Assembly: GCF_964213995.1 (NCBI RefSeq)
Contig: NC_135825.1
Coordinates: 12,276,001 to 12,340,000, forward strand
DNA: 64,000 nucleotides
Origin: Mustelus asterias
Taxonomy: Eukaryota
Direction of reading: 5' to 3'
Positions within the stretch are counted from its first letter, which is position 1. Every line of letters begins with the position of its first letter. Made by a program: the position numbers and the translations under genes. The notes beneath the pieces are model-generated. The model made no database searches, was not told the DNA's origin, and was given only the letters and a program-made list of their open reading frames with translations. Shown piece by piece: positions 4,393 through 62,995 of the stretch.

Positions 4393-4440
4393 TCATTTTC
4401 CCACTTTGGTCCAACTGTGAGAATTGGATTCATTGAGTGA
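4393..4440 (-). CDS. Gene A putative terminal cytoplasmic exon (SLNESNSHSWTKVGK*)
   Basis: Strong acceptor ttttcttttccag, phase 0, short ORF to TGA, ATTAAA/AATAAA signals downstream; same peptide in gene B. Not verified by transcripts. Confidence 0.5.
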   Translation of the reverse strand, partial: SLNESNSHSWTKVGK

Positions 4441-7400
4441 CTGGAAAAGAAAATCATCAGATTCATTGAGACTGGGAGAACAATGCATCAATTGACATTT
4501 CAGTCTTGAACAGAATTCTGGAAATGGCAACAATTTGGGGCAGTTTCGAGATCACATTGATCGCCCTTTGCATGTGCGCTGGGAAACACTCGTTTGGATC
4601 CTTCATGAAGACACATAACCTTATTTCCCCACAGAAAACCAATGTTCCCCTGCAGCTGTGATTACGGACAATTGACTGAAGAAATTGATTGTTATGTCCA
4701 TGTTTCTAAAAATATTTTATACAGTCCAGTTGGTGCTTCCAGCAACAACATCATTGGGTCTGTGTCTCAGCCTCTTACTGCTATCTGCATAATTTGAAAT
4801 CTCTTCCAGTTCCTGTCCAGAAACAGTCAGCCCTGTTGCCTTTTTATAGCCTTTCCAATTTCCTTCCTTATTCTTTTGCTGACAGTTTAATAAGATTGGA
4901 TGATAAGATGGAAGGGTTCTTCCATGGATGGGTTACACAGGAACACAGCAACAAGAGCAGCTCATTCAGCCCCTCGAGCCTGTCACACCAACCTGCAACT
5001 CCACACAGACACTCACCCAAGGCCAAAATCGAACCTGGGTCCCTGTCTTATCTAATCCCAGCTGTGAGAATTCTAATTGGCCCAGCATCCACAGATTTTA
5101 GGATGGATTAGTTCCAGATTTCCATGACTAGCTGTGTGAAAATAATACTTCCTAATTTCACTCCTAAGTATCTAAGCCCTCACTTTTGGGAGAGAGCGGG
5201 TAAATGGAGTTGAAATCAACCATGATTGAATGGTGGAGTGGACTCGATGGGCCGAATGGCCTTACTTCCGCTCCTATGTCTTATGGTCTTATGGTCTTAT
5301 GGCCCCGTGTACTCCATCTCCCCACTGGGCAAAGAGTTTCTCTGTACCCACCATACTGAATCCCATAAAAACTTCAATCACCGATCCCAGCAACCTCCAA
5401 GTGTGAGGAAATGCAGCAAAGTTGTGCAATCTCTGCACATAATTTACTCCATTTTCCCTGTATCATTCTGATGTATTGATATTGCAGAGATGATGGTTTA
5501 GTGTCAATGTCACTGGGCTAGTAATCCAGAGGCTGATAGTAAAGTGCTGGGAACATGATTTCAACATAGTAGCTGGTGGAATATAAATGCAATGAATTCA
5601 AATTCAATTGATGAATCAATCTGGAATTGAAAATCTGACCAATGGTGGCCAGGAAGCTTGTCATCAATTGCTGTAAAAACCCATCTGGTTGGTTGGAGAT
5701 GGTGATAAACTGTCATAAATTGTCATAAATCCTCACTAATATCCTTCAGGGAAGGATATCTATTTTCCTTATGCAGTCTGACCTCCATGTGACCCCAGAC
5801 CCACCGCGATGTGTTTGATTCCTAACTGTCTTCTGAAATGGCCGAGCAAGCCACTCGGATCTGGCAATTAGGGATGGGCAACAATTCTGCCCTTGCCAGT
5901 GACGTCCACATCCCGTGAAATAGAACAAAAAGACACTGCATCCCTTCCGAGGCCAATATTTTGTTCCTGTGATTCGGACACCATCCAGAACAAACAATTC
6001 AACATTGCATTATAAAATCCTCCAGTGATAAAGTGAAACTTCCATTTATGAGTGGAAGTTATCCTGGACAAAGACAGCTGATCACTTCAGGATGGATGCA
6101 GCTGCAACAAGGATCAGGAACATTGACACAATCGAAAACAAACAGTCCCCTTGATCTTTCCTCCATAACATCAGCAACACTTCAGAACCAAACCATATAA
6201 TCTGTAAGATACTTTGGGTGGACTTTCCACCCAAGTTCCTCTGGAAGGTGGGTGCGGGAGGAGGGGGGAGGGGGCTGGACAAGAGCAGAAGATCTCGCGA
6301 GAGCCCCAATATTACTTTGATGGGAAGTCTCTTTGTGATTGTCCCCAGCTCCCATCACTGACTTCACAGGATTCCCAACGTTGAACAACATAATCAATTT
6401 GCATGTCATTATCAAGACCCGGCACCTGATCAACCCCCGCTCCCCCCACACCCCCCAACCCTCACTTCCACTGTTCGATGATCCACTCATGTCAGTGTGA
6501 GGGCACACTGGTGTGCATTATGATTGATGGCCATGGCATGTACCAGGAGGAAGAGTTTTAACAACACCTGGTTAAAGTCCAACAGGTTTATTTGGTAGCA
6601 AATACCATTAGCTTTCAGAGCGCTGCTCCTTCATCAGATGGAGTGGGAATTTGCGCTCAAACAGGGCACAGAGACACAGAATCAAGTTACAGAATACTGA
6701 TTGGAATGCGAATCCCAAAGCCAACCAGATCTTAAAGACCAGGAGGGCAGACCCACTGGAGATGCTCAGGTGAGTGCATCGCTCAAAGTTACTGTCAAGG
6801 GGCAGTGTCCATTCAGTGCCAGGGGTCAGTGCCAGGGCAGTGCCCATGCTGTGCCAGTGGTCAGTGCCAGTGTCAGTGTCCATTCAGTGCCAGGGGTCAG
6901 TGCCAGGGCAGTGCCCATGCTGTGCCAGTGGTCAGTGCCAGTGTCAGTGTCCATTCAGTGCCAGGGGTCAGTGCCAGGGCAGTGCCAATGCTGTGCCAGT
7001 GGTCAGTGCCAGTGTCAGTGTCCATGCAGTGCCAGGGGTCAATGCTAGGGCAGTGTCCATGCAGTGCCAGTGGTTAGTGCCAGTGTCAGTGTCCAGGCAG
7101 TGCCAGGGGTCAGTGCCAGGGCAGTGCCCATGCTGTGCCAGTGGTCAGTGCCAGTGTCCATGCAATGCCAGGGGTCTGTGCCAGTGTCAGTGTCCATGCA
7201 GTGCCAGGGGTCAATGCTGGGGCAGTGTCCATGCAGTGCCAGTGGTCAGTGCCAGTGTCAGTGTCCATGCAGTGCCAGGGGTCAATGCTGGGGCAGTGTC
7301 CATGCAGTGCCAGTGGTCAGTGCCAGTGTCAGTGTCCATGCAGTGCCAGGGGTCAATGCTAGGGCAGTGTCCATGCAGTGCCAGTGGTTAGTGCCAGTGT

Positions 7401-10400
7401 CAGTGTCCATGCAGTGCCAGGGGTCAGTGCCAGGGCAGTGCCGATGCTGTGCCAGTGTTCAGTGCCAGTGTCAGTGTCCGTGCAATGCCAGGGGTCAGTG
7501 CCTGTGTCAGTGTCCATGCGGTGCCAGGGGTCAGTGCCTGTGTCAGTGTCCATGCAGTGCCAGGGGTCAGTGCCAGTGTCGATGCAGTGCCAGTGGTCAG
7601 TGCCAGTGTCAGTGTCCATGCAGTACCAGGGGTCAATGCTAGGGCAGTGTCCATGCAGTGCCAGGGGTTAATGCTGGGGCAGTGTCCATGCAGTGCCAGT
7701 GGTCAGTGCCAGTGTCAGTGTCCATGCAGTGCCAGGGGTCAATGCCAGAGGCAGTGTCGGGGGATGGGGGGGGCGGGGGGGGGGGTGCATGAGGTTGTGC
7801 AAGGGGAGGGGGCTTCCGTTTTCACTTTTGTGCATCAAGTTGACTTTCAAAAATATCATTTTGATCTTGAAGAAACTGAAATTTCTGGTGGGATGGGCAG
7901 TATCCTGTCCCTTCAACATTTATACACATATTCTTCACCATATTTCTTCACCGCCTCTTTTCCCGCCCCTGCCACACTTGGAAATGAAAGGTAAAATTCC
8001 CCCCTGTGTTTAGTCCTGTGGACATTGACATCAGTGCAAGTTTCTCTGCACAATATCTGTGATAATTACAAAGTGCTCAGAATGATTGTTGTAAAGTCCA
8101 TAATCCTCACCTGAGATTTTCTCGTGTACCATGTGACCGAAATCACACAAATCACCAGGAGGGTAAAGAGCCCCCAGCGAATCACATTCCAGATGAAGGA
8201 ACTGAGCAAACTGGAAGAAATACAGAATGATTTGAAGGGAATGAGGCAGCTTCGTGTTTGAAACATGAATCTCCTCTTTACACTGTGACCTATTGTAGCA
8301 GCATCGCACAGACAAGGCACGTTAGCTGGAGCAATCAACTAAAGTTTCACTGATCAACTTCATGATCATTAGATACAGATCAAATGGAGCTGGTTTCATT
8401 AACTTTCCTCAGTATATCTGTAATGCTGAGTAAAATCTTAGAAGTAAGAATGTTATGAATTGACTGGTCATTGGGACAGAAACATTGTCTGGTGCAACAT
8501 AACATTGGTGAGATATCTGTTCAGTGAGTAAGAAACTTCCAATAACATCATCCCACACTGTTCCAAAGTAGAATCATATTCCACTCAATATTAACTCTGC
8601 TCCTCTCTCCACAGATGCTACCGGACCTGCTGAGATTTTCCAGCACTTTCTGTTTTTATCATCCCACGATTCCCTGGTGCACAGGAAATTCGGAACCAGC
8701 CGGAAGCAGATGGCCTCAGTTTGGGAACAATGTATTAAACTGGGCAACTGAGAAGGGGAAGATGACAGTGAATGCAATGTTCCTGTCAGCGATACTCCAG
8801 AACACACCGGGTTAAGGGAATCTGGCATCGCTGGAGTGTGACAAACACAACTCCATGAGATTGGGTTCACGGTGAAGTGATTAACATGAATAATGAAAAC
8901 TGCACCATCTAAGGTGTGGCAAACAGAGAAAGCTCACTTCTTAGTCTGAATTTCCACTGACAGAAACAGCAACTTTGTTAGGAAGCAACACAATAGCATT
9001 ATGTAAACACAGCTACCGGGTGGGATGGTGAGCCCAGGTTGGGGGACCACAGGAATGCTGTTGGAGATTCAATATCTGGCAAAACCTGGAAGGCGCAGGC
9101 GACTTCATCAGATTCACGGCCATAGTGGGTGAGAACCTGATTTACATACATTTTAATATATTTCCATATCATTAAAGACCCCCCCACTCCCCAGATATTG
9201 AGCCCTCGCTGTGTTTTCAAACTGGGGCAACGTGACATCACATTGGTGCATTTTACAACAGGTTCACCTGGACATGATGGGGAACCCCCTTCCTGGGCAA
9301 GAGGGATATGGTCAGGCAGTGGCCTGGCAATGCCCTCTGGCACTCTCCCTTGGTGCAGGTTGGCACTGCCAAGTTGGCACCATGCCATTCCAACATTGCC
9401 AACCTGGCAGTGCCCACCTGTATCAGTGGAAGTTCCGGGGTGGACCTCAGTGGGAGTGTCATAGGGGAGGAGTTATTCGTTTACAAGTGAGGGTGGGCCG
9501 GAGCGGACAGGGGAGCTGGAGCAGCCGTTTGTGGGAAGGGGCTGGGTTTGTCGGCAATGGCTGTGTGGGTGGAGGGTTGGAGGGAAGGGCTCCAATGTTC
9601 GGGGGGAAGGGGGGTGGTGCCAACACTGACTGCTGGAGGGGGGAAAGGGTCTGATATTCGGGGGAGGGGATTGGTGTCAGCACTGATTGCTGAGGGCTGA
9701 TGTGGGGGGAGAATTGCTGGCGCATCACAGGAGGATGCGAATGCCGACTCTGATCAGGGTGTGGTGGGATTTGGGGGGAGCCCCTGAGAGCTCTGTGGTG
9801 GGGTGGGGAGGAGGTTACATTTTGCTTTGATTGGGCCGCCATGTTTGTGCACTGTCAGCTTACTGCAGCCAGGATTTGCGTATTGAGGCCCCGCCCCCTA
9901 CATGATGATGTGAAACATGCCCAGCTGTTTTTTTGTGACAGAGTGTGGTAAGTTCTGGAGACAAAGCCAACCTGCTTCGAGCCAGAACCAACAGTTTTCA
10001 GTAAGATTTCCCTAATATTGTCTTTTATGTTTACGGGGGCTGTTTACAGATTCAGCTTTATTCTGGAGGCAGTCGGTGTGTCTGTAAAACATTCAGTTCA
10101 GATGCTGGGAGAGCAGGATAATGGCTCATTTTAGCCATGGAGGGGGGAAGCTAAGCAAAAAATGACAGTGTTGTTTCCGGCAAGAAAAATGACAGGTGTC
10201 TCTCCAGAGAAACAGGTTAGATTTCTGTGCAGATCTTTGACTGAGAGAGGAAACCGGAGCACACGGAGGAAACTCACGTAGGTTCAGAGAATGTGCAGAC
10301 TCCAGGCAGACAGTCACCCAAGGCCAGAATTGAACTTGGATCCCTCGTGCTGCGAGGCAGCACTGCTAACCACAGTGCCTCTGTGTCACCTGTTGTCATA

Positions 10401-13400
10401 CCGTTATTAGGTTAAAATCCTGGAAGTTCTTACCACTCACTTTCCGTCCATGCCACACCAAAGCTGTCGATCTGTGTCACACAACTGCAGTTCTCCCGTG
10501 ATCTGTTGATCACTGACACTGTAACCATTTCACTGGATTTTTCTCCCTGGTGATTTGAGGCTGTGCAGTAATATTGATGATGTTGCTGTGTGAAGGGTTG
10601 ACAATGTAGATCCAGTTTATTGGTGTCAGAGATCTTTGAATCTTCAGACGGGGCCTTTTCATACCATGTGTACTGAATGGGAAGTGATCCCTGGACAGAC
10701 TCACAGGAGACGGACACTGAGCCCCCAGAACATGAGGCATTTGGTGGTGATAGAAATTTAAGTTCAGGAATAGACACGGTTTCTGTGGGAAAAAGACAAT
10801 CATTATCGGATTTTCACAGTAACTTCATTGCCGTGTTAATGTGAGCCTACTTGTGACACTAATTTAGAAAAGCTTTAACTTTAAACTTTAAAACTTTAAA
10901 CTTCAGAATGACCAAAAAATTAAATAGTTTCATATTACCAATATTTCTACACCTCATCCAGGGTGTGAGGAGGAAGGGAAAGTGTTAGAGAGAGAGAGAG
11001 ATGGCAGTGGGAGCTTGGCCGAATGCACGTAGTATCTATTGATTGCTGTCATGGACAGCAGATATCCATGATAGCAGATTAGTTAGTAACAAGCATTGGA
11101 GTGTGACCTGAGATAGACTGTGGATGTTTACTGAGATAACGGAGACTTAAATATCTTTCTAAAAATCTAATATCGGCCAGAATTCTCCGATATCAGATGC
11201 TTTGCCCCCGCTACCAGTGAGAACTGAGACTTTGGCGCTCAGCCAAACCTCTGTTCACAGCTGCGGGACTCGGCAATCTCGGCCGCGGGTTTGGTGAATT
11301 CCGGACATTGTTTGTATTTGTATTTGACATTTAACAGTAAGTACCATTTAAGATTTAAGTGTGAGTACTGTTTAAAGTTGAGGGCGGGGTTTTATGGCCT
11401 CGAATGAGCGAGACTGGAAAATCCCATCCAATGTCTGCTCATCATCACATTGCTCCTTGAGGGAGCTTATTGCTCACAAATTGGTGCTGAGCTTCCTACA
11501 TCACAACAATGGCTCTGAATCAGTTCCAGCATTGACCAGAACGGACTTTAAAACTGTCCTGAAGATGTGAAAAGTGCAAAGTAAATGCAATTCTATTTTA
11601 ATTCCAATTGCTTCGAGCAACTGATAGAACTTAAACCATGAGCAATTCAGACTGATGTTAATTAAACATTCGTTGTACTTTTTGAAGCGAAAAGAGATAT
11701 TTACCAATGTTGCTGATTTGTGTTAAATAACTGCAGTCATTCTCTGAAATGTGGATCACTGACACTGTAACCATTTCACTGTATTTTTCTCCCTGGTTAT
11801 TTGAGGCTGTGCAGTAATATTGATGACGTCGCTGTGTGAAGGATTGACAATGTAGATCCAGTTTATTGGTGTCAGAGATCTTTGAATCTTCAGACGGGGT
11901 CTTTTCATACCATGTGTACTGAATGGGAAGTGATCCCTGGACAGACTCACAGGAGACGGACACTGAGCCCCCAGAACATGAGGCATTTGGTGGTGATAAA
12001 AATCTAAGTTCAGGAACAGACACGGGTTCTGTGGGAAAGAAACAAACATTCAGAAACTGACTGAGCATCTAAAAATCAAACACTCTGTGAATTTCAGCTC
12101 ATCAACCTCTCATTCTGGTTCAGTCATGTTGCAATCTCACCAACACATCCAGCTCTCCATATCTCTCCATCCTCCAAGCAGCCTGAACTACAATGTCTAC
12201 TATTATATCAGAACATCACAGCTCTCCAGATCAGACCATGAACCAGGACCGAAAGATTTAAATTTAATGGTGAGTGGATTAGATGAGATTTGGGGCAATG
12301 GGTTATTTCACACGGGGGATGTTGAGGGTCTGGAATTCACTGCCTGGAAGAGTGGTAGAGGGTGGGAGAGGCGGATAACCTGATCACATTAAACAAAATG
12401 GATTCAACTTGAGATCCTGTAACCTACAGAGCTCTGGATCAAGAAATATATGGTGGGATTAGATTGGATTGCTTGTTCAGTCAACCCAGTGTGGCACAGT
12501 GGCACAGTGATTAGCACTGCAGCCTCACAGCGCCAGGGACCCGGGTTCAATTCTAGCATTGGCTGTGTGGTCAGTGTGGAGTTTGCACGTTTTCCCCGTG
12601 TCTGCGTGGCTTTCCTCTGGGTGCTTCAGTTTCCTCCCACAACCAAAGATATGCAGATACCCATGGGGAGGTGATGGCCCAGTGGTGTTATCGCTCGCCT
12701 ATTAATCCAGAATCTCATCTAATGTTCTGGGGACCAGGGTTCGAATCCCGCCATGGCAGCAGTTGGAATTTGATTTCAATAAAGAAAATCTGGAATTAAG
12801 AATCTACTGATCACGATGAAACCATTGTCAGTTATTGGAAAACCCATCTGGTTCACTCATGTCCGTTAAAGAAGGAAATCTACCATCCTTTCCTGGTCTG
12901 GCCTACATGTGATGCCAGAGCCAAAGCAATGTGGTTAATTCTTGACTGTCCTCTGAAATGGCCTCGCAAACCTCTCAGGATGGGCAATAAATGCCACCCA
13001 GCCAGCGATGCCCATGTCCACAAATGAATAAAACAAATACTGGCACCTCGCACCAGGCAGTGCCAATGTGGGTGGTGCTGGCGGGGGAGTTGGCATTCTG
13101 GGGGGTGGGGCCTATTGGGGGCTCAATGAGTTGGGGGGTTTTCAGTGACACTGTGCACTGGGATCAGTGTGAGAGGGAGAGAGGAGGGGGATCAGGGCTG
13201 GCCATCTGGGTGGGGGGAGATCGGGGCTGGCCCAGGAGAGCTCTGGTAGGCCAGTGATTGGATGGTTGTGGGGGGTCGGGATGGCCAGCGATCGGGAGGC
13301 TAGCGGTGAGGGGGCCACTGTGCATGCGCCACTCTCCGCAGTGACAGATCGGTGTGTGTGCAGTGGCTCACTCAGCACTATACTGCCGGCCTCTCCAGTG

Positions 13401-26581: not shown

Positions 26582-26618
26582 ATGTGGATTCTGATTCTTT
26601 TCATCTTTTCTCTGCCTG
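26582..26618 (+). CDS. Gene B exon 1, signal peptide (MWILILFIFSLP)
   Basis: ATG at 26582, donor G|GTGAGT. Confidence 0.85.
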
Positions 26619-32600: not shown

Positions 32601-35600
32601 TAGGCTAGCGATAACACCACTGGGCCATCACCTCCCTGTGGGTATCTGCATATCTTTGGTTGTGGGAGGAAAATGAAGCACCCAGAGGAAAACCACGCAG
32701 ACACGGGGGGAATGTGCAAATTCCACACTGACCACACAGCCAATGCTGGAATTGAATCCGAATCGCTGGCGCTGTGAGGCTGCAGTGCTAATCACTGTGC
32801 CACTGTGCCCCACTGGGTTGACTGAACAAGCAATCCAATCTAATCCCACCATCTAGTTCTTCATCCAGAGCTCTGTAGGTTACAGCATCTCAAGTTTAAT
32901 CCATTTTGTTTAATGTAATCAGGTTATCCGCCTCTCCCACCCTCGACCACTCTTCCAGGCAGTGAGTTCAGGACCCTCAACATCCCCCGAGTGAAATAAC
33001 CCATTGCCCCAAATCTCCTCTAATCCATTCACCAATTAATTTAAATCTTTAGCTCCTGGTTCATGGTCTGATCTGGAGAGCTGCGATGTCCTGATATAAT
33101 AGTAGACATTGTAGTTCAGGCTGCTGGGAGGGTGGAGAGATATGGAGAGCTGGATGTGTTGGTGAGATTGCAACATGACTGAACCTGAATGAGAGGTTGA
33201 TGAGCTGAAATTCACAGAGTGTTTGATTTTTAGATGTTCAGTCAGTGTCTGAATGTTTGTTTCTTTCCCACAGAACCCGTGTCTGTTCCTGAACTTAGAT
33301 TTTTATCACCACCAAATGCCTCATGTTCTGGGGGCTCAGTGTCCGTCTCCTGTGAGTCTGTCCAGGGATCACTTCCCATTCAGTACACATGGTATGAAAA
33401 GACCCCGTCTGAAGATTCAAAGATCTCTGACACCAATAAACTGGATCTGCATTGTCAATCCTTCAAACAGCAACATCATCAATATTACTGCACAGCCTCA
33501 AATAACCAGGGAGAAAAACCCAGTGAAATGGTGAATGAGTCAGTGATCAACATTTCAGAGAATGACTGCAGTTATTTAACACAAATCAGCAACATTGGTA
33601 AATATCACTTTAAGCTTGAAAAAGTACAACTAATTTTTAAATTAACATCAGTCTGAATAGCTCACAGGTTAAGTTCCATCAGTTGCTTGAAGCAATTGGA
33701 ATGAAAATAGAACTGCATTTATTTAGCACTTTTCAGAACTTCAGGACAGTTTTAAAGTCTGTTCTGGTCAATGCTGGAACTGATTCAGAGCCACTGTTGT
33801 GATGTAGGAAGCTCAGCACCAATTTGTGAGCAATAAGCAATAAGCACGGTAGCACAGTGGTTAGCACTGCTGCTTCACAGCTCCAGGGTCCCGGGTTCGA
33901 TTCCCGGCTCGGGTCACTGTCTGTGTGGAGTTTGCACATTCTCCTCGTGTCTGCGTGGGTTTCCTCCGGGTGCTCCGGTTTCCTCCCACAGTCCAAAGAT
34001 GTGCGGGTTAGGTTGATTGGCCAGGTTAAAAAATTGCTCCTTAGAGTCCTGGGATGTGTAGGTTAGAGGGATTAGTGGGTAAAATATGTGGGGGTAGGGC
34101 CTGGGTGGGATTGTGGTCGGTGCAGACTCGATGGGCCGAATGGCCTCCTTCTGCACTGTAGGGTTTCTATGATTTCTATGATTTCTTCTATGATTTCAAA
34201 GAGCAATGTGACCCTGAGCAGACAATCTGCTGTCTGACAATTGCTGTTTGAGAATACAATAACTCCAGGAGCCGGCTGTGAAGGAACCGTGCTTTTGTTA
34301 CACAAAATGAAAATAAAGAATAACCCCATGCCTGTGGTGAACACAAAGGTCCCAACCAGGACTGAAATGTGAATGGATCCTCTCAAGGTCTTGCTTCGTA
34401 CAAAGCTTGGTATATGAGCTCCACATGATTGGCTAATTATCACTCCCCAGGGAGCTCACATTCAATGAGGCCAACGGGGAGGTCAATGAGTGATTCCCCA
34501 CGCAGATCATGGGGTTTATCACAGAGAGATAAACTTTCCCCACTCCTCCTTTGTTCCCCTTGTCCACTGGGGTTCCCGATGTCCATGGGGTGGGGCCTGA
34601 TATTTTTGGGCAATGGCGGGGGGGATTGTGCATGCAGTGTGGTGGAGACTTTGAATGGGAGGTTTGGCATCGAGGCTGTGGGGAGTGTGAATGGGGATGC
34701 TGGCAGAGAAGGGCAGGTGTTGGGTGGAGTGCCCTGTTCTTTGAGTGGCGGGATGTTGAGGGGAGGCTGACCCTTTACATGAGGGGTGTTCCCCTTGTCC
34801 ACTGGAGGTCCCAGTGTCCATGGGGTGGATCCTGATATCTGTGGGCAATGGGGGGATTCTTTCACTTAACTTTAACTTCAACTTTAAAAATGGTGCCCAA
34901 TCTCTATGGAGACGGCCTTGCCAGCTCAATCAGGCCCCGCCCCACCAGGGTGACAACACAAAACACGCCCCCTGATGTTTTTTTGACAATGGCAGGAGAT
35001 CTGGTGGGGAAAGCAGTCTGTCTTTCTGGAGAGAAACTCACCGGTTTTCAGTCCCAACCTGAGAAGTTGAATTTTTTCTGGAAAATTCCACTAATTGTAT
35101 TAATGTTCCCAACATCTCAAACAAGAAAGTATTCAATTGCATTAGAAGATGTATTGGAGAGATTTCTCTGAACACAGTGGTAATTCCTATTGAAATATAT
35201 CTGTTTGTATGAAGCAATTATTTTCAGTTCAGTTTTTGACCTGTTGTCTTTTCAGCTCCGAGTGCATTGTGGGCAAAAAATAAAGTAACAGGAGTTTTGG
35301 GAAGATCGATCACTATAGATTGTCACTATGACAAATTGTCCCAGTCACATGTGAAAACTTGGAGTCGTCAGTGCTCTGTTTTGGTAAAATCAGACGATCC
35401 AGATGGACGGCGAGGGAGAATGTCGATCACAGATAACAAGACACAAGCATTATTTGTTGTTACTATGGAGGATCTTCGCTCAGGAGATGCAGGATGGTAC
35501 AGCTGTGGAATTGATAAGCCCGGCCTCCTTTCAATATTTCCTGTAAAGCTACAAATATCTGACGGTACATTGTTCTCAGTGATTATCTTTATTACTCTCG

Positions 35601-38600
35601 ACTGAAATGTCTGATCGGTGCTTTATCTGGGAGGAGACATTGACAGCTCCGATATCCCAAGGCTCCGCAGCAGTGCAGAGTCTGGCAGCTAGAGGGCAGT
35701 TAGAACAATGATTATGTTGGAGGAATTGTAATTCAGAGGCCCAGAGTAATGATCCAGAGAGATAGGATCAGATTTATTGCACCTTGGAACCAGCTCTCCT
35801 GGTTAACCAGTTGGCAAGGACCCCACCCATGCTCCTGATGGCTGGAAAATGGACCTTGACCACTTCCCGGATACTCACCAGATACTCACCAAAAGCTCAC
35901 TTCTTCCCCTGTAGTAAATTCCTTCAGCTCATTAAACCTCCACATTCGGTCGGAGTCAGACTCCAGTGCTGGTTGCACTGAGAATGTCTGAATTTATATG
36001 TTCAAAAACAAAGGGACTCAGTACAAAAAGACCAGTTCAAGCCAGTTTCCCCAATTAACTATTCCAGTTGCTGCCAGTGGATAGCTTCTATCGCCCAGCT
36101 CATGCCCTTTGGATGGTACTTATGTCAAAATTTTACTGCCTCGCCCGCCATGGTATCGGAGCGGGTGTGGGGCAGACAACGGAAATGTCTGTTGACCTTG
36201 GCCGGGATTTTACAGTCTCGCTCATTCGAGGCCATAAAACCCCACCCTGAAATTGAAACAGTACTCACACTTAAATGTTAAATGGTACTTACTGTTAAAT
36301 GTTAAATAAAAATACAAACAATGGCCGGAATTCACCGAACCCGTCCGCAGCTGGAATTATCCAGTCCTGCTGCTGTGAATGGAGATTTGGCTGAGCGCCA
36401 AATTCCCTATTCCAACTGGCAGCAGGGGCGGATCACTCGATATCAGAGATTTCAGGTCAAGATTAGATTTTTAGATAGATATTTTAAGTCTCCGTTATCT
36501 CAGCAAACATCCACAGTCTATCTCAGGTCACACTCCAATGCTTGTTACTAACTAATCTGCGATCATGAATATCTGCTGTCCGTGACTGCAATCAATAGAT
36601 ACTACCTGCATTCGGCCAAGCTCTCACTGCCATCTCTCTCTCTCTCTAACACTTTCCCTTCCTCCTCACACCCTGGATCAGGTGTCGAAATATTGGTAAC
36701 ATGAAACTATTTAATTTTTTGGTCATTCTAAAGTTTAAAGTTTTAAAGTTTAAAGTTAAACCTTTATTTAATTCGTGTCACAAGTAGGCTTACATTAACA
36801 CTGCAATGAAGTTACTGTGAAAATCCATTAATGATTGTCTTTTTCCCACAGAACCCGTGTCTGTTTCTGAACTTAGATTTTTATCACCACCAAATGTCTC
36901 ATGTTCTGGGGGCTCAGTGTCCGTCTCCTGTGAGTCTGTCCAGGGATCACTTCCCATTCAGTACACATGGTATGAAAAGACCCCGTCTGAAGATTCAAAG
37001 ATCTCTGACACCAATAAACTGGATCTACATTGTCAATCCTTCAAACAGCAACATCATCAATATTACTGCACAGCCTCAAATAACCAGGGAGAAAAATCCA
37101 GTGAAATGGTTCCAGTGTCAGTGATCCACATTTCAGAGAATGATTGCAGTTATTTAACACAAATCAGCAACATTGGTAAATATCACTTTAAGCTTCAAAA
37201 AATTCAACTAATTTTTGAATTAATGTCTGTCTGAATTGCTCACGGGTTTAGTTCTATTGCTCGAAGCAATTTTAATAAATATAGTATTGCATTTTTTTCG
37301 CTTTTCACAACTTCAGGTCAGTTTTAAAGTCAGTTCTGGTCGATGCTGGAACTGATTCAGAGCCATTGTTGTGATGTAGGAAGCTCAGCACCAATTTGTG
37401 AGCAATAAGCTCCCTCAAGGAGCAATGTGATCATGAGCAGACAATCTGCTGTCTGACAATTGCTGTTTGAGAATATAATAACTCCAGGAGCCGGATGTGA
37501 AGGAACCGTGCTTTTATTGTACAACATGAAAATAAGCAATAACCACACACCTGTGGTGAACACAACAGGTCCCAACCAATACTAAAAGATTAATGGACCC
37601 TCTCAAGGTCTTGCTTTATAAAGGGAATGTCATACAATCTCAATATGGTTGTCTAATTATCAACCCACGGGGAGCACATATTCAGTGATACCAACGATCT
37701 CAAACAAGGAAGTATCCAATTGCATTAGAAGATGTATTGGAGAGATTTCTCTGAACACAGTGGTAAATCCTATTGAAATATATCTATTTGTATGAAGCAA
37801 TTATTTTCAGTTCAATTTTTGACCACTTGTCTTTCCAGCTCCAAGTGCCTTGTCAGCAAAAAATAATGTAACAGGAGTTTTGGGAAGATCGATCACTATA
37901 GATTGTCACTATGACAAATTGTCCCAGTCACATGTGAAAACTTGGAGTCGTCAGTGCTCTGTTTTGGTAAAATCAGATGATCCAGATGGACGGCGAGGGA
38001 GAATGTCGATCACAGATAACAAGACACAAGGATCATTTGTTGTTACTATGGAGGAACTTCACTCAGGAGATGCAGGATGGTACAGCTGTGGAATTGATAA
38101 GCCCGGCTTCCTTTCAATATTTCCTGTAAAGCTACAAATATCTGACGGTACATTGTTCTCTGTGATTATCTTTATTCCTCTCGACTGAAATGTCTGATCG
38201 GTGCTTTATCTGGGAGGAGACATTGACAGCTCCGATATCCCGAGGCTCCGCAGCAGTGCAGAGTCTGGCAGCTAGAGGGCAGTTGGAACAATGATTATGT
38301 TGGAGGAATTGTAATTCAGAGGCCCAGAGTAAAGGTCCAGAGAGATGGGGTCAGATTTATTGCACCTTGGACACTGCTCTGCTGGTTAACAAGTTGGCAA
38401 GGACCCCACCCATGCTCCCGATGCCTGGACAATAAACCTTGACCACTCCCCGGAAAGTCACCAGATACGCACCAACAGCTCACTTCTTCCCCTGTTGTAA
38501 ATTCCTTCGGATCATTAAACCTCCACACTCGGTCGGAGTCAGACTCCAGTGCTGGTTGCACTGAGAATGCCTGAATTTATATGTTCAAAAACAAAGGGAC

Positions 38601-41600
38601 TCAGTACAAAAAGACCAGTTCAAGCCAGTTTCCCCAATTAACTATTCCAGTTGCTGCCAGTTATTAGCTTTCATCTTCCAGCTCATGTCCTTTGGATGAG
38701 ATTTAGACTTCAATCAGTACATGTCGTCAAAATGTTAAACAGTTCTCACAATTAAATCCCAGACAGCGATCAATAGATACGACTTGCAATTGGCCAAACT
38801 CCCACTGCCATCACTCTCTCTCTCTCTCTAACACTCTCCCTTCCTCCTCATACTCTGGATGAGATGTAGAAATATTGGTGACATGAAAGTATTTAATTTT
38901 TTGGTCATTCAATTTGTATCTGAATGTTTGTTCCTTTCCTACAGAACCCGTGTCTGTTCCTGAACTTATATTTCTATCACCACCAATTGTCTCATGTTCT
39001 GGGGGCTCCGTGTCCGTCTCCTGTGAGTCTGTCCAGGGATCACTTCCCATTCAGTACACATGGTATGAAAAGACCCCATCTGAAGATTCAAAGATCTCTG
39101 ACACCAATAAACTGGATCTCCATTGTCAATCCTTCACACAGCAACATCATCAATATTACTGCACAGCCTCAAATAACCAGGGAGAAAAATCCAGTGAAAC
39201 GGTTACAGTGTCAGTGATCAACAGATCAGGGGAGAATTGCAGTTGTGTGACACAGATCGACAGCTTTGGTGTGGCATGGACGGAAAGTGAGTGGTAAGAA
39301 ATACCATGATTTTGACCTAATAACGGTATGACAACAGGTGACACAGGGGCACTGTGGTTAGCAGTGCTGCCTCGCAGCACGAGGGATCCAAGTTCAATTC
39401 TGGCCTTGGGTGACTGTCTGCCTGGAGTCTGCACGTTCTCTGTACCTATGTGAGTTTCCTCCGTGTGCTCCGGTTTCCTCTCTCAGTCAAAGATCTGCAC
39501 AGAAATCTAACCTGTTTCTCTGGAGAGACACCTGTCGGTTTTCTCGCCGGAAACAACACTGTCATTTTTTGCTTAGCTTCCCCCCTACATGGCTAAAATG
39601 AGCCATTATCCTGCTCTCCCAGCATCTGAGCTAAATGTTTTACAGACACACCGACTGCCTCCAGAATAAAGCTGAATCTGTCAACAGCCCCCATAAACAT
39701 AAAACACAAGATTTGGGAAATCTGACTGAAAACTGTTGGTTCTGGCTCGAAGCAGGTTGGCTTTCTCTCCAGAACTTACCACATTCTGTCACAAAAAAAA
39801 CAGCTGGGCGTGTTTCACATCATCATGTAGGGGGCGGGGCCTCGATACACCAGCAAATCCTGGCTGCAGTAAGCTGACAGTGCACAAACATGGCGGCCCA
39901 ATCAAAACAAAATGTTTCCCCCAAATCCCACCACACCCCGGTCAGAGTCGGGGCATCCTCCTATTATGAGCCAGCAATTCTCCCCCCACATCACCCCTCA
40001 GCAGTCAGTGCTGACACCAAGCCCCTCCCCCAAATATCAAACCCTTCCTCCCTTCGTGCAGTCAGTGCTGGCACCACCCCCCTTCCCCCCGAACATTGGA
40101 GCCCTTCCCTCCAACCCTCCACCCACACAGCCATTGCCGACAAACCCAGCCCCTTCCCACAAACGGCTACTCCAGCTCCCCTGTCCGCTCCGGCCCACCC
40201 TCACTTGTAAATGAATAACCCCTCCCCCATGAGACTCCCACTGAGGTCCACCCCGGAACTGCCACTGGTACAGGTTGGCACTGCCAAATTGGCAATTTTG
40301 GGGTGGCATGGTGCCAACTTGGTAGTGCCAACCTGTGCCAAGGGAGAGTGCCAGAGGGCATTGCCAGGCCACTGCCTGACCATATCCCTCTTGCCCAGGA
40401 AGGGGGTTCCCCATCATGTCCAGGTGAACCTGTTGTAAAATGCACCAATATAATGTCACGTTGCCCTGGTTTGAAAACACAGCGAGGGCTCAATATCTGG
40501 GGCGGGGGACGGGGGGGTGGGGAGAGGGGCGGTGGGGGTCGGTGGGGGGTCTTGAATGATATCCAAATATATTAAAATGTTTGTAAATCAGGTTCTCACC
40601 CACTATGGTGGTGAATCTGATGAAGCCACCTGCGCCCTCCAGGTTTTGCCAGATATTGAATCCCCAACAGCATTCCTGTGGTCCCCCAACCCGGGCTCAC
40701 CATCCCACCCAGTGGCTGTGTTTACATAATGCTATTGTGTTAGCTTCCTAACAAGTTGCTGCTTCTGTCAGTGGAAATTCAGACTAAAAAGTGAGCTTTC
40801 TCTGTTTGCCACACCTTAGATGTTGCAGTTTTCATTATTCATGTTAATCACTTCACCGTGAACCCAATCTCATGGAGTTGTGCTTGTCACACTCCAGCGA
40901 TGCCAGATTCCCTTAACCCGGTGTGTTCTGGAGTATCGCTGACAGGAACATTGCATTCACTGTCATCTTCTCCTTCTCAGTTGCCCAGTTTAATACATTG
41001 TTCCCAAACTGAGGCCATCTGCTTCCGGCTGGTTCCGAATTTCCTGTTAGGAGGTGCACCAGGGAATTGTGGGATGATGAAAACAGAAAGTGATGGAAAA
41101 ACTCAGCAGGTCCGGCAGCATCTGTGGAGAGAGGAGCAGAGTTAATATTGAGTGGAATATGATTCTACTTTGAAACAGTGTGGGATGATGTTATTGGAAG
41201 TTTCTTACTCACTGAACAGATATCTCACCAATGTTATGTTGCACCAGACAATGTTTCTGTCCCAATGACCAGTCAATTCATAACATTCTTACTTCTAAGA
41301 TTTTACTCAGCATTCCAGATATACTGAGGAAAGTTAATGAAACCAGCTCCATTTGATCTGTATCTAATGATCATGAAGTTGATCAGTGAAACTTTAGTTG
41401 ATTGCTCCAGCTAACGTGCCTTGTCTGTGCGACGTTGCTACAATAGGTCACAGTGTAAAGAGGAGATTAATGTTTCAAACACGAAGCTGCCTCATTCCCT
41501 TCAAATCATTCTGTATTTCTTCCAGTTTGCTCAGTTCCTTCATCTGGAATGTGATTCGCTGGGGGCTCTTTACCCTCCTGGTGATTTGTGTGATTTCGGT

Positions 41601-43736
41601 CACATGGTACACGAGAAAATCTCAGGTGAGGATTATGGACTTTACAACAATCATTCTGAGCACTTTGTAATTATCACAGATATTGTGCAGAGAAACTTGC
41701 ACTGATGTCAATGTCCACAGGATTAAACACGGGGGGGAATTTTACCTTTCATTTCCAAGTGTGGCAGGGGCAGGAAAAGGGGCGGTGAAGAAATATGGTG
41801 AAGAATATGTGTATAAATGTTGAAGGGACAGGATACTGCCCATCCCACCAGAAATTTCAGTTTCTTAAAGATCAAAATGATATTTTTGAAAGTCAACTTG
41901 ATGCACAAAAGTGAAAATGAAACCCCCCTCCCCTTGCACAACCCCATGCACACCTCCCCCCCGCCCCCCCCGCCGCCCCCCCCATCCCCTGACACTGCCT
42001 CTGGCACTGACCCCTGGCACTGCATGGACGCTGCCCCAGCAGTGACCCTTGGCACTGCATGGACACTGACACTGGGGCACTGACCCCTGGCACTGCATGG
42101 ACACTGACACAGGCATTGACAACTGGCACCGCATGAACACTGACCCCTGATACTGCATGGACGCTGCCCCAGCATTGACCCCTGGTACTGCATGGACACT
42201 GACACTGGCACTGACCACTGGCACTGCATGGACACTGTCCCCGCACTGACCCCTGGCACTGCATGGACACTGACACTGGCACTGACCATTGGCGCTGCAT
42301 GGACACTGTTCTATTTCACGGGATGTGGACGTCACTGGCAAGGGCAGAATTGTTGCCCATCCCTAATTGCCAGATCCGAGTGGCTTGCTTGGCCATTTCA
42401 GAAGACAGTTCGGAATCAAACCCATCGCGGTGGGTCTGGGGTCACATGGAGGTCAGACTGCATAAGGAAAACAGATATCCTTCCGTGAACGATATTAGTG
42501 AGCACTTATGACAATTTATGACCGTTTATCACCATCTCCAACCAACCAGATGGGTTTTTACAACAATTGATGACAAGTTTCCTGGTCACCATTGGTCAGA
42601 TTTTCAATTCCAGATTGATTCATCAATTGAATTTGAATTCATTGCATTTATATTCCACCAGCTACTATGTTGAAATCATGTTCCCAGCACTTTATTATCA
42701 GCCTCTGGATTACTAGCCCAGTGACATTGACACGAAACCACCATCTCTGCAATATCAATACATCAGAATGATACAGGGAAGAATGGAGTAAATTATGTGC
42801 AGACATTGCACAAATTTGCTGCATTTCCTCACACTTGGAGGTTGCTGGGATCGGTGATTGAAGTTTTTATGGGATTCAGTATGGTGGGTACAGAGAAACT
42901 CTTTGCCCAGTGGGGAGATGGAGTACACGGGGCCATAACCCAAAAGTGAGGGCTTAGATACTTAGGAGTGAAATTAGAAAGTATTATTTTCACACAGCTA
43001 GTCATGGAAACCTGGAACTAATCCATCCTAAAATCTGTGGATGCTGGGCCAATTAGAATTCTCACAGCTGGGATTAGATAAGACAGGGACCCAGGTTCGA
43101 TTTTGGCCTTGGGTGAGTGTCTGTGTGGAGTTGCAGGTTGGTGTGACAGGCTCGAGGAGCTGAATGAGCTGCTCTTGTTGCTGTGTTCCTGTGTAACCCA
43201 TCCATGGAAGCACCCTTCCATCTTATCATCCAATCTTATTAAACTGTCAGCAAAAGGAAAAGGAAGGAAATTGGAAAGGTTATAAAAAGGCAACAGGGCT
43301 GACTGTTTCTGGACAGGAACTGGAGGAGATTTCAAATGATTCAGACTGCAGTAAGAGGCTGAGACACAGACCCAATGATGTTGTTGCTGGAAGCACCAAC
43401 TGGACTGTATAAAATATTTTTAGAAACATGGACATAGCAATCAATTTCTCCAGTCAATTGTCCATAATCACAGCTTCAGGGGAACATTGGTTTTCTGTGG
43501 GTAAATAAGGTTATGTGTCTTCATGAAGGATCCAAACGAGTGTTTCCCAGCGCACATGCAAAGGGCGATCAATGTGATCTCGAAACTGCCCCAAATTGTT
43601 GCCATTTCCAGAATTCTTTTCAAGACTGAAATGTCAATTGATGCATTGTTCTCCCAGTCTCAATGAATCTGATGATTTTCTTTTCCAGTCACTCAATGAA
43701 TCCAATTCTCACAGTTGGACCAAAGTGGGAAAATGA
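26582..43736 (+). CDS. Gene B: spliced pIgR/CD300-like Ig-superfamily receptor, L-(V-C2)x3-TM-short tail. Predicted exons 26582-26618, 29752-30072, 33274-33597, 35256-35564, 36852-37175, 37839-38147, 38945-39293, 41526-41625, 43689-43736; about 706 aa
   Basis: GT-AG introns with phase-1 junctions between Ig exons. Lengths sum to 2121 nt in one open frame. Confidence 0.8.
27251..27915 (-). mobile_element. CR1-type LINE 3' end inserted only in intron 1 of gene B
   Basis: RRNLFTQRVVNVWNSLP peptide and microsatellite tail; the site is empty in genes A (near 17630) and C (near 63628). Confidence 0.85.
28935..29065. repeat. 21-bp tandem repeat, about 6 copies, in intron 1 of gene B (about 2-3 copies in gene A near 16250-16300)
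   Basis: Unit CCAAAGAGTAACTTTCCCCTC. Confidence 0.85.
29752..30072 (+). CDS. Gene B V1 exon (pIgR/CD300-type V domain)
   Basis: GRSITINCNY..KYWCHGWTERC..DAGLYRCGI; 321 nt, canonical splice sites. Confidence 0.9.
30715..31250 (-). mobile_element. CR1-type LINE 3' end
   Basis: ALERLQKRFTRMLPG..RRLRGDLIEVYKIM..FFTQRVV. Confidence 0.9.
33274..33597 (+). CDS. Gene B C2 exon 1
   Basis: EPVSVPEL..CESVQGSLPIQYTWY..YYCTASN; ttcccacag acceptor and G|GTAAAT donor. Confidence 0.88.
33845..34197 (+). mobile_element. Full-length tRNA-derived SINE (HE1/V-SINE-like), specific to gene B
   Basis: Box A/B head (TAGCACAGTGG..GGTTCGATTCC), central GTGTGGAGTTTGCAC domain and (TTTCTATGA)n tail. The site is empty near 37410 and 11465. 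Confidence 0.88.
35256..35564 (+). CDS. Gene B V2 exon (shortened C-C' region)
   Basis: APSALWAKNKVTGVLGRSITIDCHY..KTWSRQC..DAGWYSCGI; 309 nt; ttttcag acceptor and G|GTACAT donor. Confidence 0.85.
36852..37175 (+). CDS. Gene B C2 exon 2
   Basis: Near-identical to C2 exon 1; 324 nt; canonical splice sites. Confidence 0.87.
37839..38147 (+). CDS. Gene B V3 exon (near copy of V2)
   Basis: APSALSAKNNVTGVLGRSITIDCHY..DAGWYSCGI; 309 nt; ctttccag acceptor and G|GTACAT donor. Confidence 0.85.
38945..39293 (+). CDS. Gene B membrane-proximal C2 exon 3
   Basis: C2 motifs, ends ..NCSCVTQIDSFGVAWTESE; donor TG|GTAAGA (phase 2). Confidence 0.82.
41526..41625 (+). CDS. Gene B transmembrane exon with N-x-x-R motif
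   Basis: ttcttccag|T TTG CTC..; peptide WNVIRWGLFTLLVICVISVTWYTRKSQ; donor CAG|GTGAGG. Confidence 0.85.
43689..43736 (+). CDS. Gene B putative terminal cytoplasmic exon (SLNESNSHSWTKVGK*)
   Basis: Polypyrimidine acceptor, phase 0, TGA at 43734-43736, ATTAAA near 43853 and AATAAA near 44003. Confidence 0.5.
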   Translation, partial: SLNESNSHSWTKVGK

Positions 43737-62958: not shown

Positions 62959-62995
62959 ATGTGGATTCTGATTCTTGTCATCTTTTCTCTGCCTG
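62959..62995 (+). CDS. Gene C exon 1, signal peptide (MWILILVIFSLP); the rest of the gene lies beyond the window
   Basis: Third copy of the leader exon with intact ATG and G|GTGAGT donor; the flanks match those of genes A and B. Confidence 0.8.

What the first reader, a model, noticed from the sequence alone, without database searches (positions are those of the whole stretch)
4393..43736. Expanding family of modular (V-C2)n immunoreceptors combining pIgR/CD300-type and FcR-like domains
Seen in sequence: two complete spliced genes and the start of a third. Their ectodomains pair a V domain (KYWC-x6-C, DAGxYxCG) with a C2 domain (CESVQGSLPIQYTWY), in different numbers: A is V-C2-C2, B is V-C2-V-C2-V-C2. 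Established: mammalian pIgR, FcmuR, Fca/muR and CD300 use only such V domains, while FcR/FCRL/PECAM proteins use C2 arrays. Inference: this is a chondrichthyan receptor family mixing the two, possibly binding Ig, lipid or pathogen ligands. Automated annotation would probably call it 'pIgR-like'; I cannot tell whether the architecture has been characterised.
Basis: partly seen in the sequence, partly recalled or inferred. Interest (0 to 1): 0.85.

Follow-up and report, generated by a model that had tools for sequence, protein, structure and literature searches.

The report
Shark MDIR-family immune receptor genes
Two neighbouring shark genes, plus the start of a third, encode cell-surface immune receptors built from alternating V-type and C2-type antibody-like domains; they are real, but belong to the MDIR receptor family first described in a skate in 2006.

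Summary
The window has 4 V exons and 5 C2 exons and no others. They form two intact genes placed head to head.

- **Gene A**, minus strand: leader, V, C2, C2, TM, tail.
- **Gene B**, plus strand: leader, (V-C2)x3, TM, tail.

All Ig exons are phase 1-1 and multiples of three. The V exons are pIgR/CD300-like. The C2 exons are FCRL5-like.

The architecture is not new. Clearnose-skate MDIR5 (V-C2-V-C2, Arg in the TM, short tail), MDIR2 and MDIR3 are clear homologues: V 51-56% and C2 53-69% identical. The family also occurs in chimaera, many sharks and rays, and as V-C2-TM(Arg) in ray-finned fishes.

A and B have a TM arginine (N-V-I-R) and a roughly 20-residue tail with no signalling tyrosine, so they look like activating receptors. 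The third gene matches an NCBI 12-Ig model with ITIMs, so the cluster looks like a paired-receptor locus.

First readers of this scan noted the same family in other windows of this genome.

Verdict: a new member of a known kind, of moderate interest.

The parts
18266..18302 (-). Gene A leader exon, coding part: MWILILFIFSLP plus 1 nt, donor G|GTGAGT, phase 1
   Evidence: tblastn of P0001 residues 1-12, 100%; sequence read
15231..15551 (-). Gene A V exon (321 nt, phase 1-1), CD300/pIgR-type with the C-x6-C extra cysteine pair
   Evidence: Exact match to P0001 residues 16-119. The upstream acceptor is taken from P0001's 'SLPVSGALRAE'
11705..12028 (-). Gene A first C2 exon (324 nt, phase 1-1)
   Evidence: exact match in P0001
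10434..10782 (-). Gene A second C2 exon. The Ig part is 10782-10459. It is extended to 10434 if the TG|GTAAGA donor is used, which is the only one of three candidate donors that stays in frame with the TM exon. Its 5' flank aligns with the flank of B's C2-2 and its 3' part with B's C2-3
   Evidence: donor choice inferred
8111..8210 (-). Gene A transmembrane exon (100 nt): LLSSFIWNVIRWGLFTLLVICVISVTWYTRKSQ, donor CAG|GTGAGG, ends in phase 0
   Evidence: tblastn with shark homologues; sequence
4393..4440 (-). Gene A terminal coding exon: SLNESNSHSWTKVGK plus stop
26582..26618 (+). Gene B leader exon, coding part; identical peptide to gene A's
29752..30072 (+). Gene B V1 exon. 23 of 106 residues differ from A's V, clustered in the loop regions
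33274..33597 (+). Gene B C2-1 exon
35256..35564 (+). Gene B V2 exon (309 nt): internal V subtype with a single Cys in place of the extra pair
36852..37175 (+). Gene B C2-2 exon
37839..38147 (+). Gene B V3 exon: tandem duplicate of V2 (11 of 306 nt differ)
38945..39293 (+). Gene B C2-3 exon. The Ig part ends at 39268. It extends to 39293 with the in-frame TG|GTAAGA donor, which would give ...GVAWTESE-C- joined to the TM exon
   Evidence: donor choice inferred
41526..41625 (+). Gene B transmembrane exon, with N-V-I-R in the outer part of the helix
43689..43736 (+). Gene B terminal coding exon: SLNESNSHSWTKVGK plus stop. An AATAAA-type hexamer lies 116 nt downstream
62959..62995 (+). Leader exon of a third gene (MWILILVIFSLP). 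It equals the N-terminus of NCBI model LOC144511684 (P0267): leader, (V-C2)x6, TM, ITIMs
2186..18762 (.). Left arm of the large inverted duplication (gene A with flanks). It pairs with 26122-46000 at 90-97% identity in the long blocks

Best explanation
The window comes from a Mustelus asterias-like shark. [quoted passage not shown]

**Structure.** Each ectodomain module is one CD300/pIgR-type V exon followed by one FCRL-type C2 exon. All Ig exons are symmetric (phase 1-1), so modules can be duplicated or deleted without breaking the reading frame.

**Origin of A and B.** They are inverted, head-to-head paralogues about 5% diverged. B has three modules; modules 2 and 3 are a recent tandem duplicate. 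A aligns with B minus V2, and minus the stretch between C2-2 and C2-3 that holds V3. That leaves V-C2-C2.

**Signalling (inferred).** Both genes end in a TM helix with an arginine (N-V-I-R) and a tail of about 20 residues with no signalling tyrosine. I infer that they are activating receptors. The membrane-distal V binds a ligand, and the TM arginine recruits an ITAM-bearing adaptor (FcR-gamma-like or DAP12-like).

**Paired locus.** The third gene's leader matches a 12-Ig NCBI model with an ITIM tail, so the cluster would act as a paired activating/inhibitory system.

**Ligand.** It is unknown. By analogy with CD300 and, from recall, DICP, it may be a lipid or a pathogen surface. Immunoglobulin is a less likely possibility.

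**Confidence.** The stated confidence is for family membership and gene structure. The adaptor-coupled activating mechanism alone I would put at about 0.6.
For: **Exons.** Counts, splice sites and phases. Pfam V-set E about 1e-10. V matches pIgR at 6e-41 and CLM-1 at 1e-20. C2 matches FCRL5 at 9e-34.

**Family membership.**
- MDIR5 (P0216), MDIR2 (P0253) and MDIR3 (P0305) of Rostroraja eglanteria were retrieved by name.
- The window's V exons are 51-56% identical to them (E 1e-32 to 1e-38). Its C2 exons are 53-69% identical (E 1e-34 to 1e-45).
- MDIR5 is leader-V-C2-V-C2-TM(WKVGRWLLF)-short tail. MDIR2 is V-C2-TM-ITIM. MDIR3 is V-V-C2-V-C2-TM-ITIMs.
- The elephant-shark entry AFK11143.1, named 'MDIR2', is V-C2-TM-ITIMs.

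**Exon joins.** The V-to-C2 junction predicted here...QIS(D/E/Y)|E|PVSVPEL..., is collinear with ...QVSDEPVSVPVL... in those proteins.

**Architecture census.** Of the 266 proteins held: VC 98, VCVC 14, VCVCVC 3, VCC 4.

**Gene ends.** Leader, TM and terminal exons were found with intact splice sites in both genes.

**Reading frames are maintained.**
- 0 indels in 1506 aligned exon positions, against 3.8 expected at the non-exon rate (P=0.023).
- 0 stop codons, against 5.2 expected among 87 exon substitutions (P=0.006).

**Origin of A.** The block alignment is.

**Inhibitory partners in the same species.** P0243, P0285 and P0267.

**Adaptor.** NxxR-type TMs associate with FcR-gamma in Xenopus FcR-like and mammalian LRC receptors (PMC2413239 and PMC4536121, passages read).
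Against:
- **Exons are not better conserved than introns** (0.058 against 0.049 substitutions per site). dN/dS is 0.6-0.95 for C2 pairs and 1.5 for V1, on few changes. Purifying selection on the protein is therefore not shown.
- **The N of N-x-x-R is not conserved.** 0 of 34 xxxRWxLF motifs in retrieved V+C2 homologues have N; they have K 10, D 7, E 6, S 5, T 4, L 2. Homology to the FcR-gamma-coupling TM type, and the choice of adaptor, remain open.
- **NCBI models fit poorly.** The model holding gene A's Ig exons (P0001) is an 11-Ig chain without a TM and is probably chimeric. None of the 7 Mustelus asterias models checked contains a gene B exon exactly.
- **The join of the last C2 exon to the TM exon** rests only on reading frame.
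- **No ligand evidence of any kind.**
Confidence: 0.8

Rival explanations
1. The genes encode the missing immunoglobulin (Fc or polymeric-Ig) receptors of cartilaginous fish. The pIgR/FcmuR-type V and FcR/FCRL-type C2 domains would bind IgM, IgW or IgNAR. This is a claim about the ligand, and it is compatible with MDIR membership.
For: Both domain types come from families that include Ig-binding receptors. One ray homologue is auto-named 'high affinity immunoglobulin alpha and immunoglobulin mu Fc receptor-like'. That no pIgR or Fc receptor has been characterised in sharks is my recollection, not a tool result.
Against: No binding data exist. Most CD300, TREM and FCRL members do not bind Ig. 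As I recall, the teleost analogue DICP binds lipids. The short tail has none of the long cytoplasmic part of pIgR, so a transcytosis role is unlikely. The distal V differs sharply between paralogues, which fits varied ligands better than a conserved Fc.
Confidence: 0.1
2. A and/or B are non-functional recent duplicates drifting neutrally, or the inverted duplication is an assembly artefact.
For: Exon divergence equals or exceeds intron divergence. dN/dS is near 1. Gene B is absent from the 7 Mustelus asterias NCBI models checked. A is a deletion derivative. The DNA runs listed hold at most 0.46 of the sampled words.
Against: There are no stops (P=0.006) and no indels (P=0.023) in any exon. All splice sites examined are canonical in both genes. 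About 5% divergence plus structural differences between the arms does not fit a collapsed or duplicated haplotype. The VCC layout also occurs in a ray protein (P0009, one of 4 VCC rows).
Confidence: 0.07
3. The genes are true orthologues of pIgR, CD300 or FCRL rather than a separate family.
For: Automated names and domain-level similarity.
Against: pIgR and CD300 have V domains only, and FCRL has C2-type domains only, whereas here the two alternate. FCRL genes split the signal peptide 30/21 bp over two exons (PMC2413239, passage read). Here one leader exon carries 37 coding nt and the rest lies in the V exon. The best full-length relatives are MDIRs.
Confidence: 0.03

Closest known systems
Modular domain immune-type receptors (MDIR1-5) of the clearnose skate Raja/Rostroraja eglanteria. 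Cannon et al. 2006, Immunogenetics 58:362: paper not held here. It is cited and summarised in PMC3031540, and its abstract is recalled.
   Same: - The same two domain types in the same order. MDIR5 is V-C2-V-C2 with an Arg-containing TM (xxxRWLLF) and a short tail. MDIR2 is V-C2 with an ITIM tail. MDIR3 is V-V-C2-V-C2 with an ITIM tail.
- 51-69% identity per domain.
- A multigene family with activating-like and inhibitory forms.
   Different: - Not one-to-one orthologues. Shark V domains fall into two shark-specific subtypes, and skate MDIR V domains group apart.
- Mustelus has N at the -3 position of the TM Arg.
- The genomic layout seen here was not found in the searchable papers: inverted paralogues, cassette duplication and deletion, and NCBI models of up to 12 Ig domains in Mustelus and 19 in Amblyraja. 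The 2006 paper itself could not be read.
[quoted passage not shown]
   Same: Clustered multigene family. Two Ig classes pair as D1-D2 and duplicate as D1a-D2a-D1b-D2b. There are inhibitory (ITIM), activating (TM arginine), secreted and ambiguous forms (bioRxiv 10.1101/2021.06.11.448072, passages read). That D1 is V-like and that DICPs bind lipid is recalled from Haire et al. 2012, which I did not read here.
   Different: Homology was not tested, because no DICP sequence was retrieved. None of the 52 proteins matched by the gar V-C2-TM(R) protein, the query itself included, carries a DICP name. The preprint's passage lists chondrichthyans among the lineages in which such families had been thought absent.
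CD300 / CMRF35-like molecules and pIgR (V domain)
   Same: V-set fold with the extra Cys pair after the W of strand C (KYWC-x6-C) in V1-type exons. pIgR E 6e-41, CLM-1 E 1e-20.
   Different: Those proteins have V domains only. Here each V is followed by a C2. The internal V exons have lost one Cys of the extra pair.
FCRL / FcR-like receptors, including the Xenopus XFL family with NxxR transmembrane segments
   Same: The C2 exon aligns to six of the FCRL5 Ig domains shown and shares GSLPI.Y and YYCTA.N. Both are paired activating/inhibitory families. N-x-x-R lies at the outer end of the TM, as in XFL TM1, which associates with FcR-gamma (PMC2413239).
   Different: FCRL ectodomains lack V domains. 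The FCRL signal peptide is split 30/21 bp over two exons, whereas here there is a single leader exon. The N of NxxR is not conserved in this family.
Unnamed V-C2-TM(Arg) proteins of ray-finned fishes (gar XP_015197915 and 51 matched proteins)
   Same: The same V-C2 pair (V 29-34%, C2 37-38% identical to the window's exons). The TM motif is xxxRWLLF and the tail is short.
   Different: One module only. Most species appear once in the list. None is characterised.

Membership tests
MDIR (modular domain immune-type receptors) | CD300/pIgR-like Ig domain homologous to the MDIR N-terminal domain | tested here: met
   The 4 window V exons against MDIR5 and MDIR2: 51-56% identity, E 1e-32 to 1e-38
MDIR (modular domain immune-type receptors) | FcR-homologue-like C2 domain homologous to the MDIR second domain | tested here: met
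   The 5 window C2 exons against MDIR5 and MDIR2: 53-69% identity, E 1e-34 to 1e-45
MDIR (modular domain immune-type receptors) | Modular ectodomains with a variable number of Ig domains (one to six, as I recall from the abstract) | tested here: met
   A has 3 Ig domains and B has 6. MDIR2 has 2, MDIR5 has 4 and MDIR3 has 5
MDIR (modular domain immune-type receptors) | Forms with a charged TM and short tail, and forms with cytoplasmic ITIMs, in one multigene family | tested here: met
   A and B have Arg in the TM and a tail with no signalling tyrosine. Same-species ITIM forms are P0243, P0285 and P0267; the last shares its leader with the window's third gene
MDIR (modular domain immune-type receptors) | Expressed as spliced mRNA joining the modules | not testable with these tools
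Only indirect support: the homologous skate and chimaera protein entries are collinear across the predicted junction
pIgR | Ectodomain of V-type domains only, and a long cytoplasmic tail | tested here: not met
   C2 exons alternate with V exons. The tail after the TM is about 20 residues and the TM holds an Arg. The criteria themselves are from general knowledge
CD300 | A single V domain on a stalk | tested here: not met
   3 and 6 Ig domains, including C2
FCRL / classical FcR | C2-type domains only; signal peptide split over two exons with a 21-bp second exon | tested here: not met
   V exons are present. There is a single leader exon of 37 coding nt, with the rest of the signal peptide in the V exon. 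The rule is taken from PMC2413239
DICP | D1 and D2 domains with their diagnostic cysteines, grouping with DICP domains in trees | not tested
   No DICP sequence was obtained. 0 of 52 proteins in the gar-homologue search carry that name
NxxR-type (TM1) FcR-gamma-coupled receptors | Conserved N-x-x-R at the N-terminal end of the TM, homologous to the LILRA/GPVI/FcalphaR/XFL TM | tested here: inconclusive
   The motif N-V-I-R is present in A and B. The N is absent from all 34 homologous xxxRWxLF motifs. No LRC or XFL TM sequence was compared

The most novel reading that the evidence does not exclude
The V-C2 module is an ancient gnathostome unit, with a CD300/pIgR-type V fused to an FCRL-type C2 and an Arg-bearing TM. 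Ray-finned fishes keep it as a single module. Elasmobranchs have turned it into a cassette system. Because every Ig exon is symmetric in phase, modules are duplicated and deleted in the genome: n = 1 to at least 6 in Mustelus NCBI models, and 19 Ig domains in an Amblyraja model. Modules could also be skipped in splicing, which would give a combinatorial receptor repertoire. The variable distal V might recognise pathogens or the shark's own immunoglobulins, making these candidate Fc-type or pIg-type receptors in a lineage where, as I recall, none is characterised.
Probability: 0.15. Interest if true: 0.8.

Novelty: new member of a known kind. Interest (0 to 1): 0.38.

Why it matters
It shows that what automated annotation labels variously as pIgR-like, FCRL5, CMRF35-like, titin-like or uncharacterised in shark genomes is one family, the MDIRs. 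I found only one paper in the searchable library that mentions that family.

The locus gives a clear picture of how such receptors diversify:
- inverted gene duplication;
- tandem duplication and deletion of symmetric-phase V-C2 cassettes;
- faster change in the membrane-distal V;
- activating and inhibitory forms sharing near-identical 5' regions.

It also gives concrete candidates to clone when looking for ligands, including shark immunoglobulins.

Tried and rejected

**NCBI gene table.** I tried to reach it through the look-up of encoding contigs.

**The MDIR paper and a review by the same group.** Neither is held. What I say about the 2006 abstract is recalled. Supplementary files were not opened. 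They could bear on the DICP and MDIR domain definitions.

**A stalk exon between the last C2 and the TM.** tblastn with 8 homologues found none at E<=1. I therefore propose a direct join through the only in-frame donor. This is inference.

**pIgR, CD300 and FCRL orthology.** Rejected on architecture and leader structure.

**PECAM similarity.** Not seen in the 60 PDB rows shown.

**Structure prediction.** Not run. Sequence matches to solved structures were already significant, and a multi-exon model would have needed a joined sequence.

**Spliced model.** I searched it exon by exon and left out the joined step. No concatenated A or B protein was made, searched or folded.

**C2 domain tree.** The sequences were prepared, but the tree was not built or shown.


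Full report
**What is in the window**

Six-frame ORFs and a tblastn of the window's own V and C2 translations against the whole window give exactly four V exons and five C2 exons at E<=1e-3. Reading their flanks and locating acceptors and donors shows three things. Every Ig exon starts after an AG and ends before a GT. Every one is in phase 1-1. Every one is a multiple of three: V1-type 315 nt from the inner acceptor or 321 nt from the outer one, internal V 309 nt, and C2 324 nt.

Pfam calls the V exons V-set (41-44 bits, cut-off 26). It places the C2 exons just below the Ig_3 and Ig_2 cut-offs (29.1-29.7 against 30).

DAGxYxCG is in 4 of 4 V exons, and CESVQGSLPIQYTWY is in 5 of 5 C2 exons. 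KYWC-x6-C is only in the two membrane-distal V exons. V2 and V3 read KTWSRQC.

**Gene models**

The spliced model was searched exon by exon. I made no joined protein.

A public protein found with the C2 exon, XP_078098046.1 of Mustelus asterias (P0001), contains gene A's V, C2a and C2b translations exactly. This identifies the source species or a very close relative.

- **Leaders.** P0001's first 12 residues locate three leader exons: 18302-18267(-), 26582-26617(+) and 62959-62994(+). Each is followed by G|GTGAGT, phase 1.
- **TM exon.** Shark homologues locate it at 8210-8111(-) and 41526-41625(+). It reads LLSSFIWNVIRWGLFTLLVICVISVTWYTRKSQ and ends at CAG|GTGAGG in phase 0.
- **Terminal exon.** The tail of a catshark homologue locates a last coding exon, SLNESNSHSWTKVGK plus stop, at 43689-43736(+) and 4440-4393(-).
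- **Last C2 to TM.** The TM exon begins with one base that completes a codon. Of the three GT donors after the last C2 exon, only TG|GTAAGA (39293|39294 in B, 10434 in A) keeps the frame. This join is inferred.

So A is leader-V-C2-C2-TM-tail and B is leader-(V-C2)x3-TM-tail. They lie head to head, with their leaders 8.3 kb apart.

**Relation of A to B**

The two genes lie on arms of a large inverted duplication. Block alignment shows:

| Gene A | Gene B | Identity |
|---|---|---|
| 16299-11465 | 29019-33838 | 93.8% |
| 11435-10457 | 36194-37177 | 89.9% |
| 10804-7401 | 38923-42308 | 91.4% |

Relative to B, A therefore lacks the segment holding V2. A's second C2 exon combines the upstream flank of C2-2 with the body of C2-3, which removes V3. 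V2/C2-2 and V3/C2-3 are a recent tandem duplicate; V2 and V3 differ at 11 of 306 nt.

**Are the genes maintained?**

The results are mixed.

- Exons are not more conserved than non-exon sequence: 87/1506 = 0.058 against 503/10334 = 0.049 substitutions per site.
- dN/dS is 0.58-0.95 for C2 pairs, 0.62 for V2 against V3, and 1.51 for A_V against B_V1, all on few changes.
- The distal V exon differs at 10.7% of bases and 23 of 106 residues, clustered in loop regions. Its downstream flank differs at 2.3% (16/693) but its upstream flank at 8.2% (56/685). The excess is therefore clear on one side only.
- Exons hold 0 indel events where 3.8 are expected at the non-exon rate (P=0.023).
- Exons hold 0 stop codons where 5.2 are expected from 87 random substitutions (P=0.006).

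I read this as open reading frames kept under selection while the protein sequence evolves fast. It is not proof of function.

**What the domains are**

Against solved structures, V1 matches pIgR (E 6e-41 over several domains) and CD300/CLM-1 (E 1e-20). TREM2, NKp44 and TIM follow far behind.

The C2 exon matches FCRL5 (E 9e-34 in all; best single domain 29.2 bits), sharing CE..GSLPI.Y and YYCTA.N. CD22 d6-d7 (2e-4) and FCRL4 (9e-4) come next.

**What the family is**

The whole-library HMMER search with one C2 exon gave 760 proteins at E<=0.001. The top ones are elasmobranch proteins with several V and C2 stretches.

Cluster look-up named an elephant-shark entry 'modular domain immune-type receptor 2' (AFK11143.1), which is V-C2-TM-ITIMs. 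Searches seeded with the catshark protein P0026 and with P0001 retrieved MDIR5, MDIR2 and MDIR3 of Rostroraja eglanteria by name.

| Skate protein | Layout |
|---|---|
| MDIR5 | leader-V-C2-V-C2-TM(WKVGRWLLF)-short tail |
| MDIR2 | V-C2-TM-ITIM |
| MDIR3 | V-V-C2-V-C2-TM-ITIMs |

The window's V exons are 51-56% identical to the skate MDIRs and its C2 exons 53-69%. [quoted passage not shown] 2006. That paper is not held. I recall that its abstract reports one to six Ig ectodomains and a similarity to FcR homologues.

The architecture has therefore been characterised. The window holds new members of that family.

**Breadth of the family**

- **Census.** Of the 266 proteins held, 248 had a V or C2 hit: VC 98, VCVC 14, VCVCVC 3, VCC 4. 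The many C-only rows are the distant FCRL-like hits. Some long rows are fused gene models.
- **Long models.** Mustelus asterias has L-(V-C2)x6-TM-ITIMs (P0267, 1458 aa), L-(V-C2)x6 (P0268, auto-named 'titin-like') and L-(V-C2)x3-TM-ITIMs (P0285). An Amblyraja model has 19 Ig domains. These are predictions that I could not check against RNA.
- **Third gene.** P0267's first 12 residues equal the third leader exon in the window. The 'start of a third' gene is therefore most likely this inhibitory 12-Ig gene.
- **Ray-finned fishes.** A gar protein (P0143) and 51 other ray-finned-fish proteins share V-C2-TM(xxxRWLLF). None carries a curated name or a DICP name.
- **V tree.** With 44 V domains, the window's V1-type exons sit in a starred clade with the N-terminal V of other sharks (96/93). 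V2 and V3 sit in a starred clade with the internal V domains of Mustelus, Hemiscyllium and Chiloscyllium (95/94). Skate MDIR V domains group apart (85/65, not starred). So there are two old shark V subtypes, lineage-specific expansion, and no one-to-one orthology.

**How it most likely works**

- **Shown:** type I membrane layout, an Arg in the TM, and a tail of about 20 residues with no signalling tyrosine, in both A and B. ITIM-bearing relatives exist in the same species, one of them starting in this window.
- **Inferred:** A and B are activating receptors that need an ITAM adaptor bound through the TM Arg.

The N-V-I-R arrangement resembles the NxxR TM that couples Xenopus FcR-like and mammalian LRC receptors to FcR-gamma (PMC2413239 and PMC4536121, passages read). 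However, the N is not conserved: 0 of 34 homologous motifs have it. The conserved element is R-W-x-L-F, and the adaptor is open.

The ligand is unknown. Lipid or pathogen surfaces are the most likely, by analogy with CD300 and, from recall, DICP. Immunoglobulin is an attractive but unsupported possibility.

**What I could not do**

- Gene B's exons are in none of the 7 Mustelus models I checked.
- P0001 looks chimeric. After gene A's three Ig exons it continues with Ig exons that are not in this window. It ends in a piece similar to sequence lying between the last C2 and the TM exon.
- DICP homology was not tested.

**Earlier notes of this scan**

First readers noted the same family in several other windows of this genome, from about 398 kb before to 595 kb beyond this window. 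Those notes are unchecked. I used them as leads only, mainly for the TM exon position and the third gene.

**Verdict**

This is a real and intact pair of MDIR-family receptor genes, plus the first exon of a third. They are new members of a known kind. The mechanism of module gain and loss is clearly visible in the locus, and ligand and expression remain open.

Noticed in passing
window 54151-58230 (-): Uninterrupted 1359-aa gag-pol ORF of an LTR retrotransposon: aspartyl protease, RVT_1, RNase H, integrase zinc finger and integrase core (Pfam E 1e-4 to 5e-25).
   Followed up: partly
window 51393-52040 (-): ORF with a DDE_Tnp_4 (PIF/Harbinger-type) transposase domain, E 2.7e-23. It runs into an N run, which I left alone.
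   Followed up: partly
window 6838-7758 (gene A) and 41991-42308 (gene B): A minisatellite in the intron between the TM exon and the terminal exon. It reads as long Cys/Gln/Ser-rich ORFs on both strands. It is much longer in A: blastn gives many offset matches about 70 nt apart.
   Followed up: no
P0001 (XP_078098046.1), and window 9002-9139 (-) / 40589-40726 (+): The NCBI model joins gene A's V-C2-C2 to eight further Ig domains that are not in this window. It ends in a 46-residue piece that is 87-93% identical to sequence lying between the last C2 and the TM exon. It is either a chimeric model or an alternative 3' end.
   Followed up: partly
P0143 and 51 other proteins: Ray-finned fishes from gar and sturgeon to percomorphs have an unnamed V-C2-TM(xxxRWLLF) protein of about 300-360 aa that resembles the shark activating form. 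Most species appear once in the list.
   Followed up: partly
window C2 exons (e.g. 36852-37175) and internal V exons (35256-35564, 37839-38147): Each C2 exon has five cysteines, and each internal V has an odd cysteine. The stalk Cys seen in one-module homologues is spliced out of internal modules. An inter-domain disulfide is conceivable but untested.
   Followed up: no
window 17631-18762, 26122-27252, 62370-63944: The 5' regions, including the leader exons, of all three genes are 96-97% identical, although the third gene's matching NCBI model is inhibitory and A and B look activating. Promoter and leader seem to be shared across the paired forms.
   Followed up: partly
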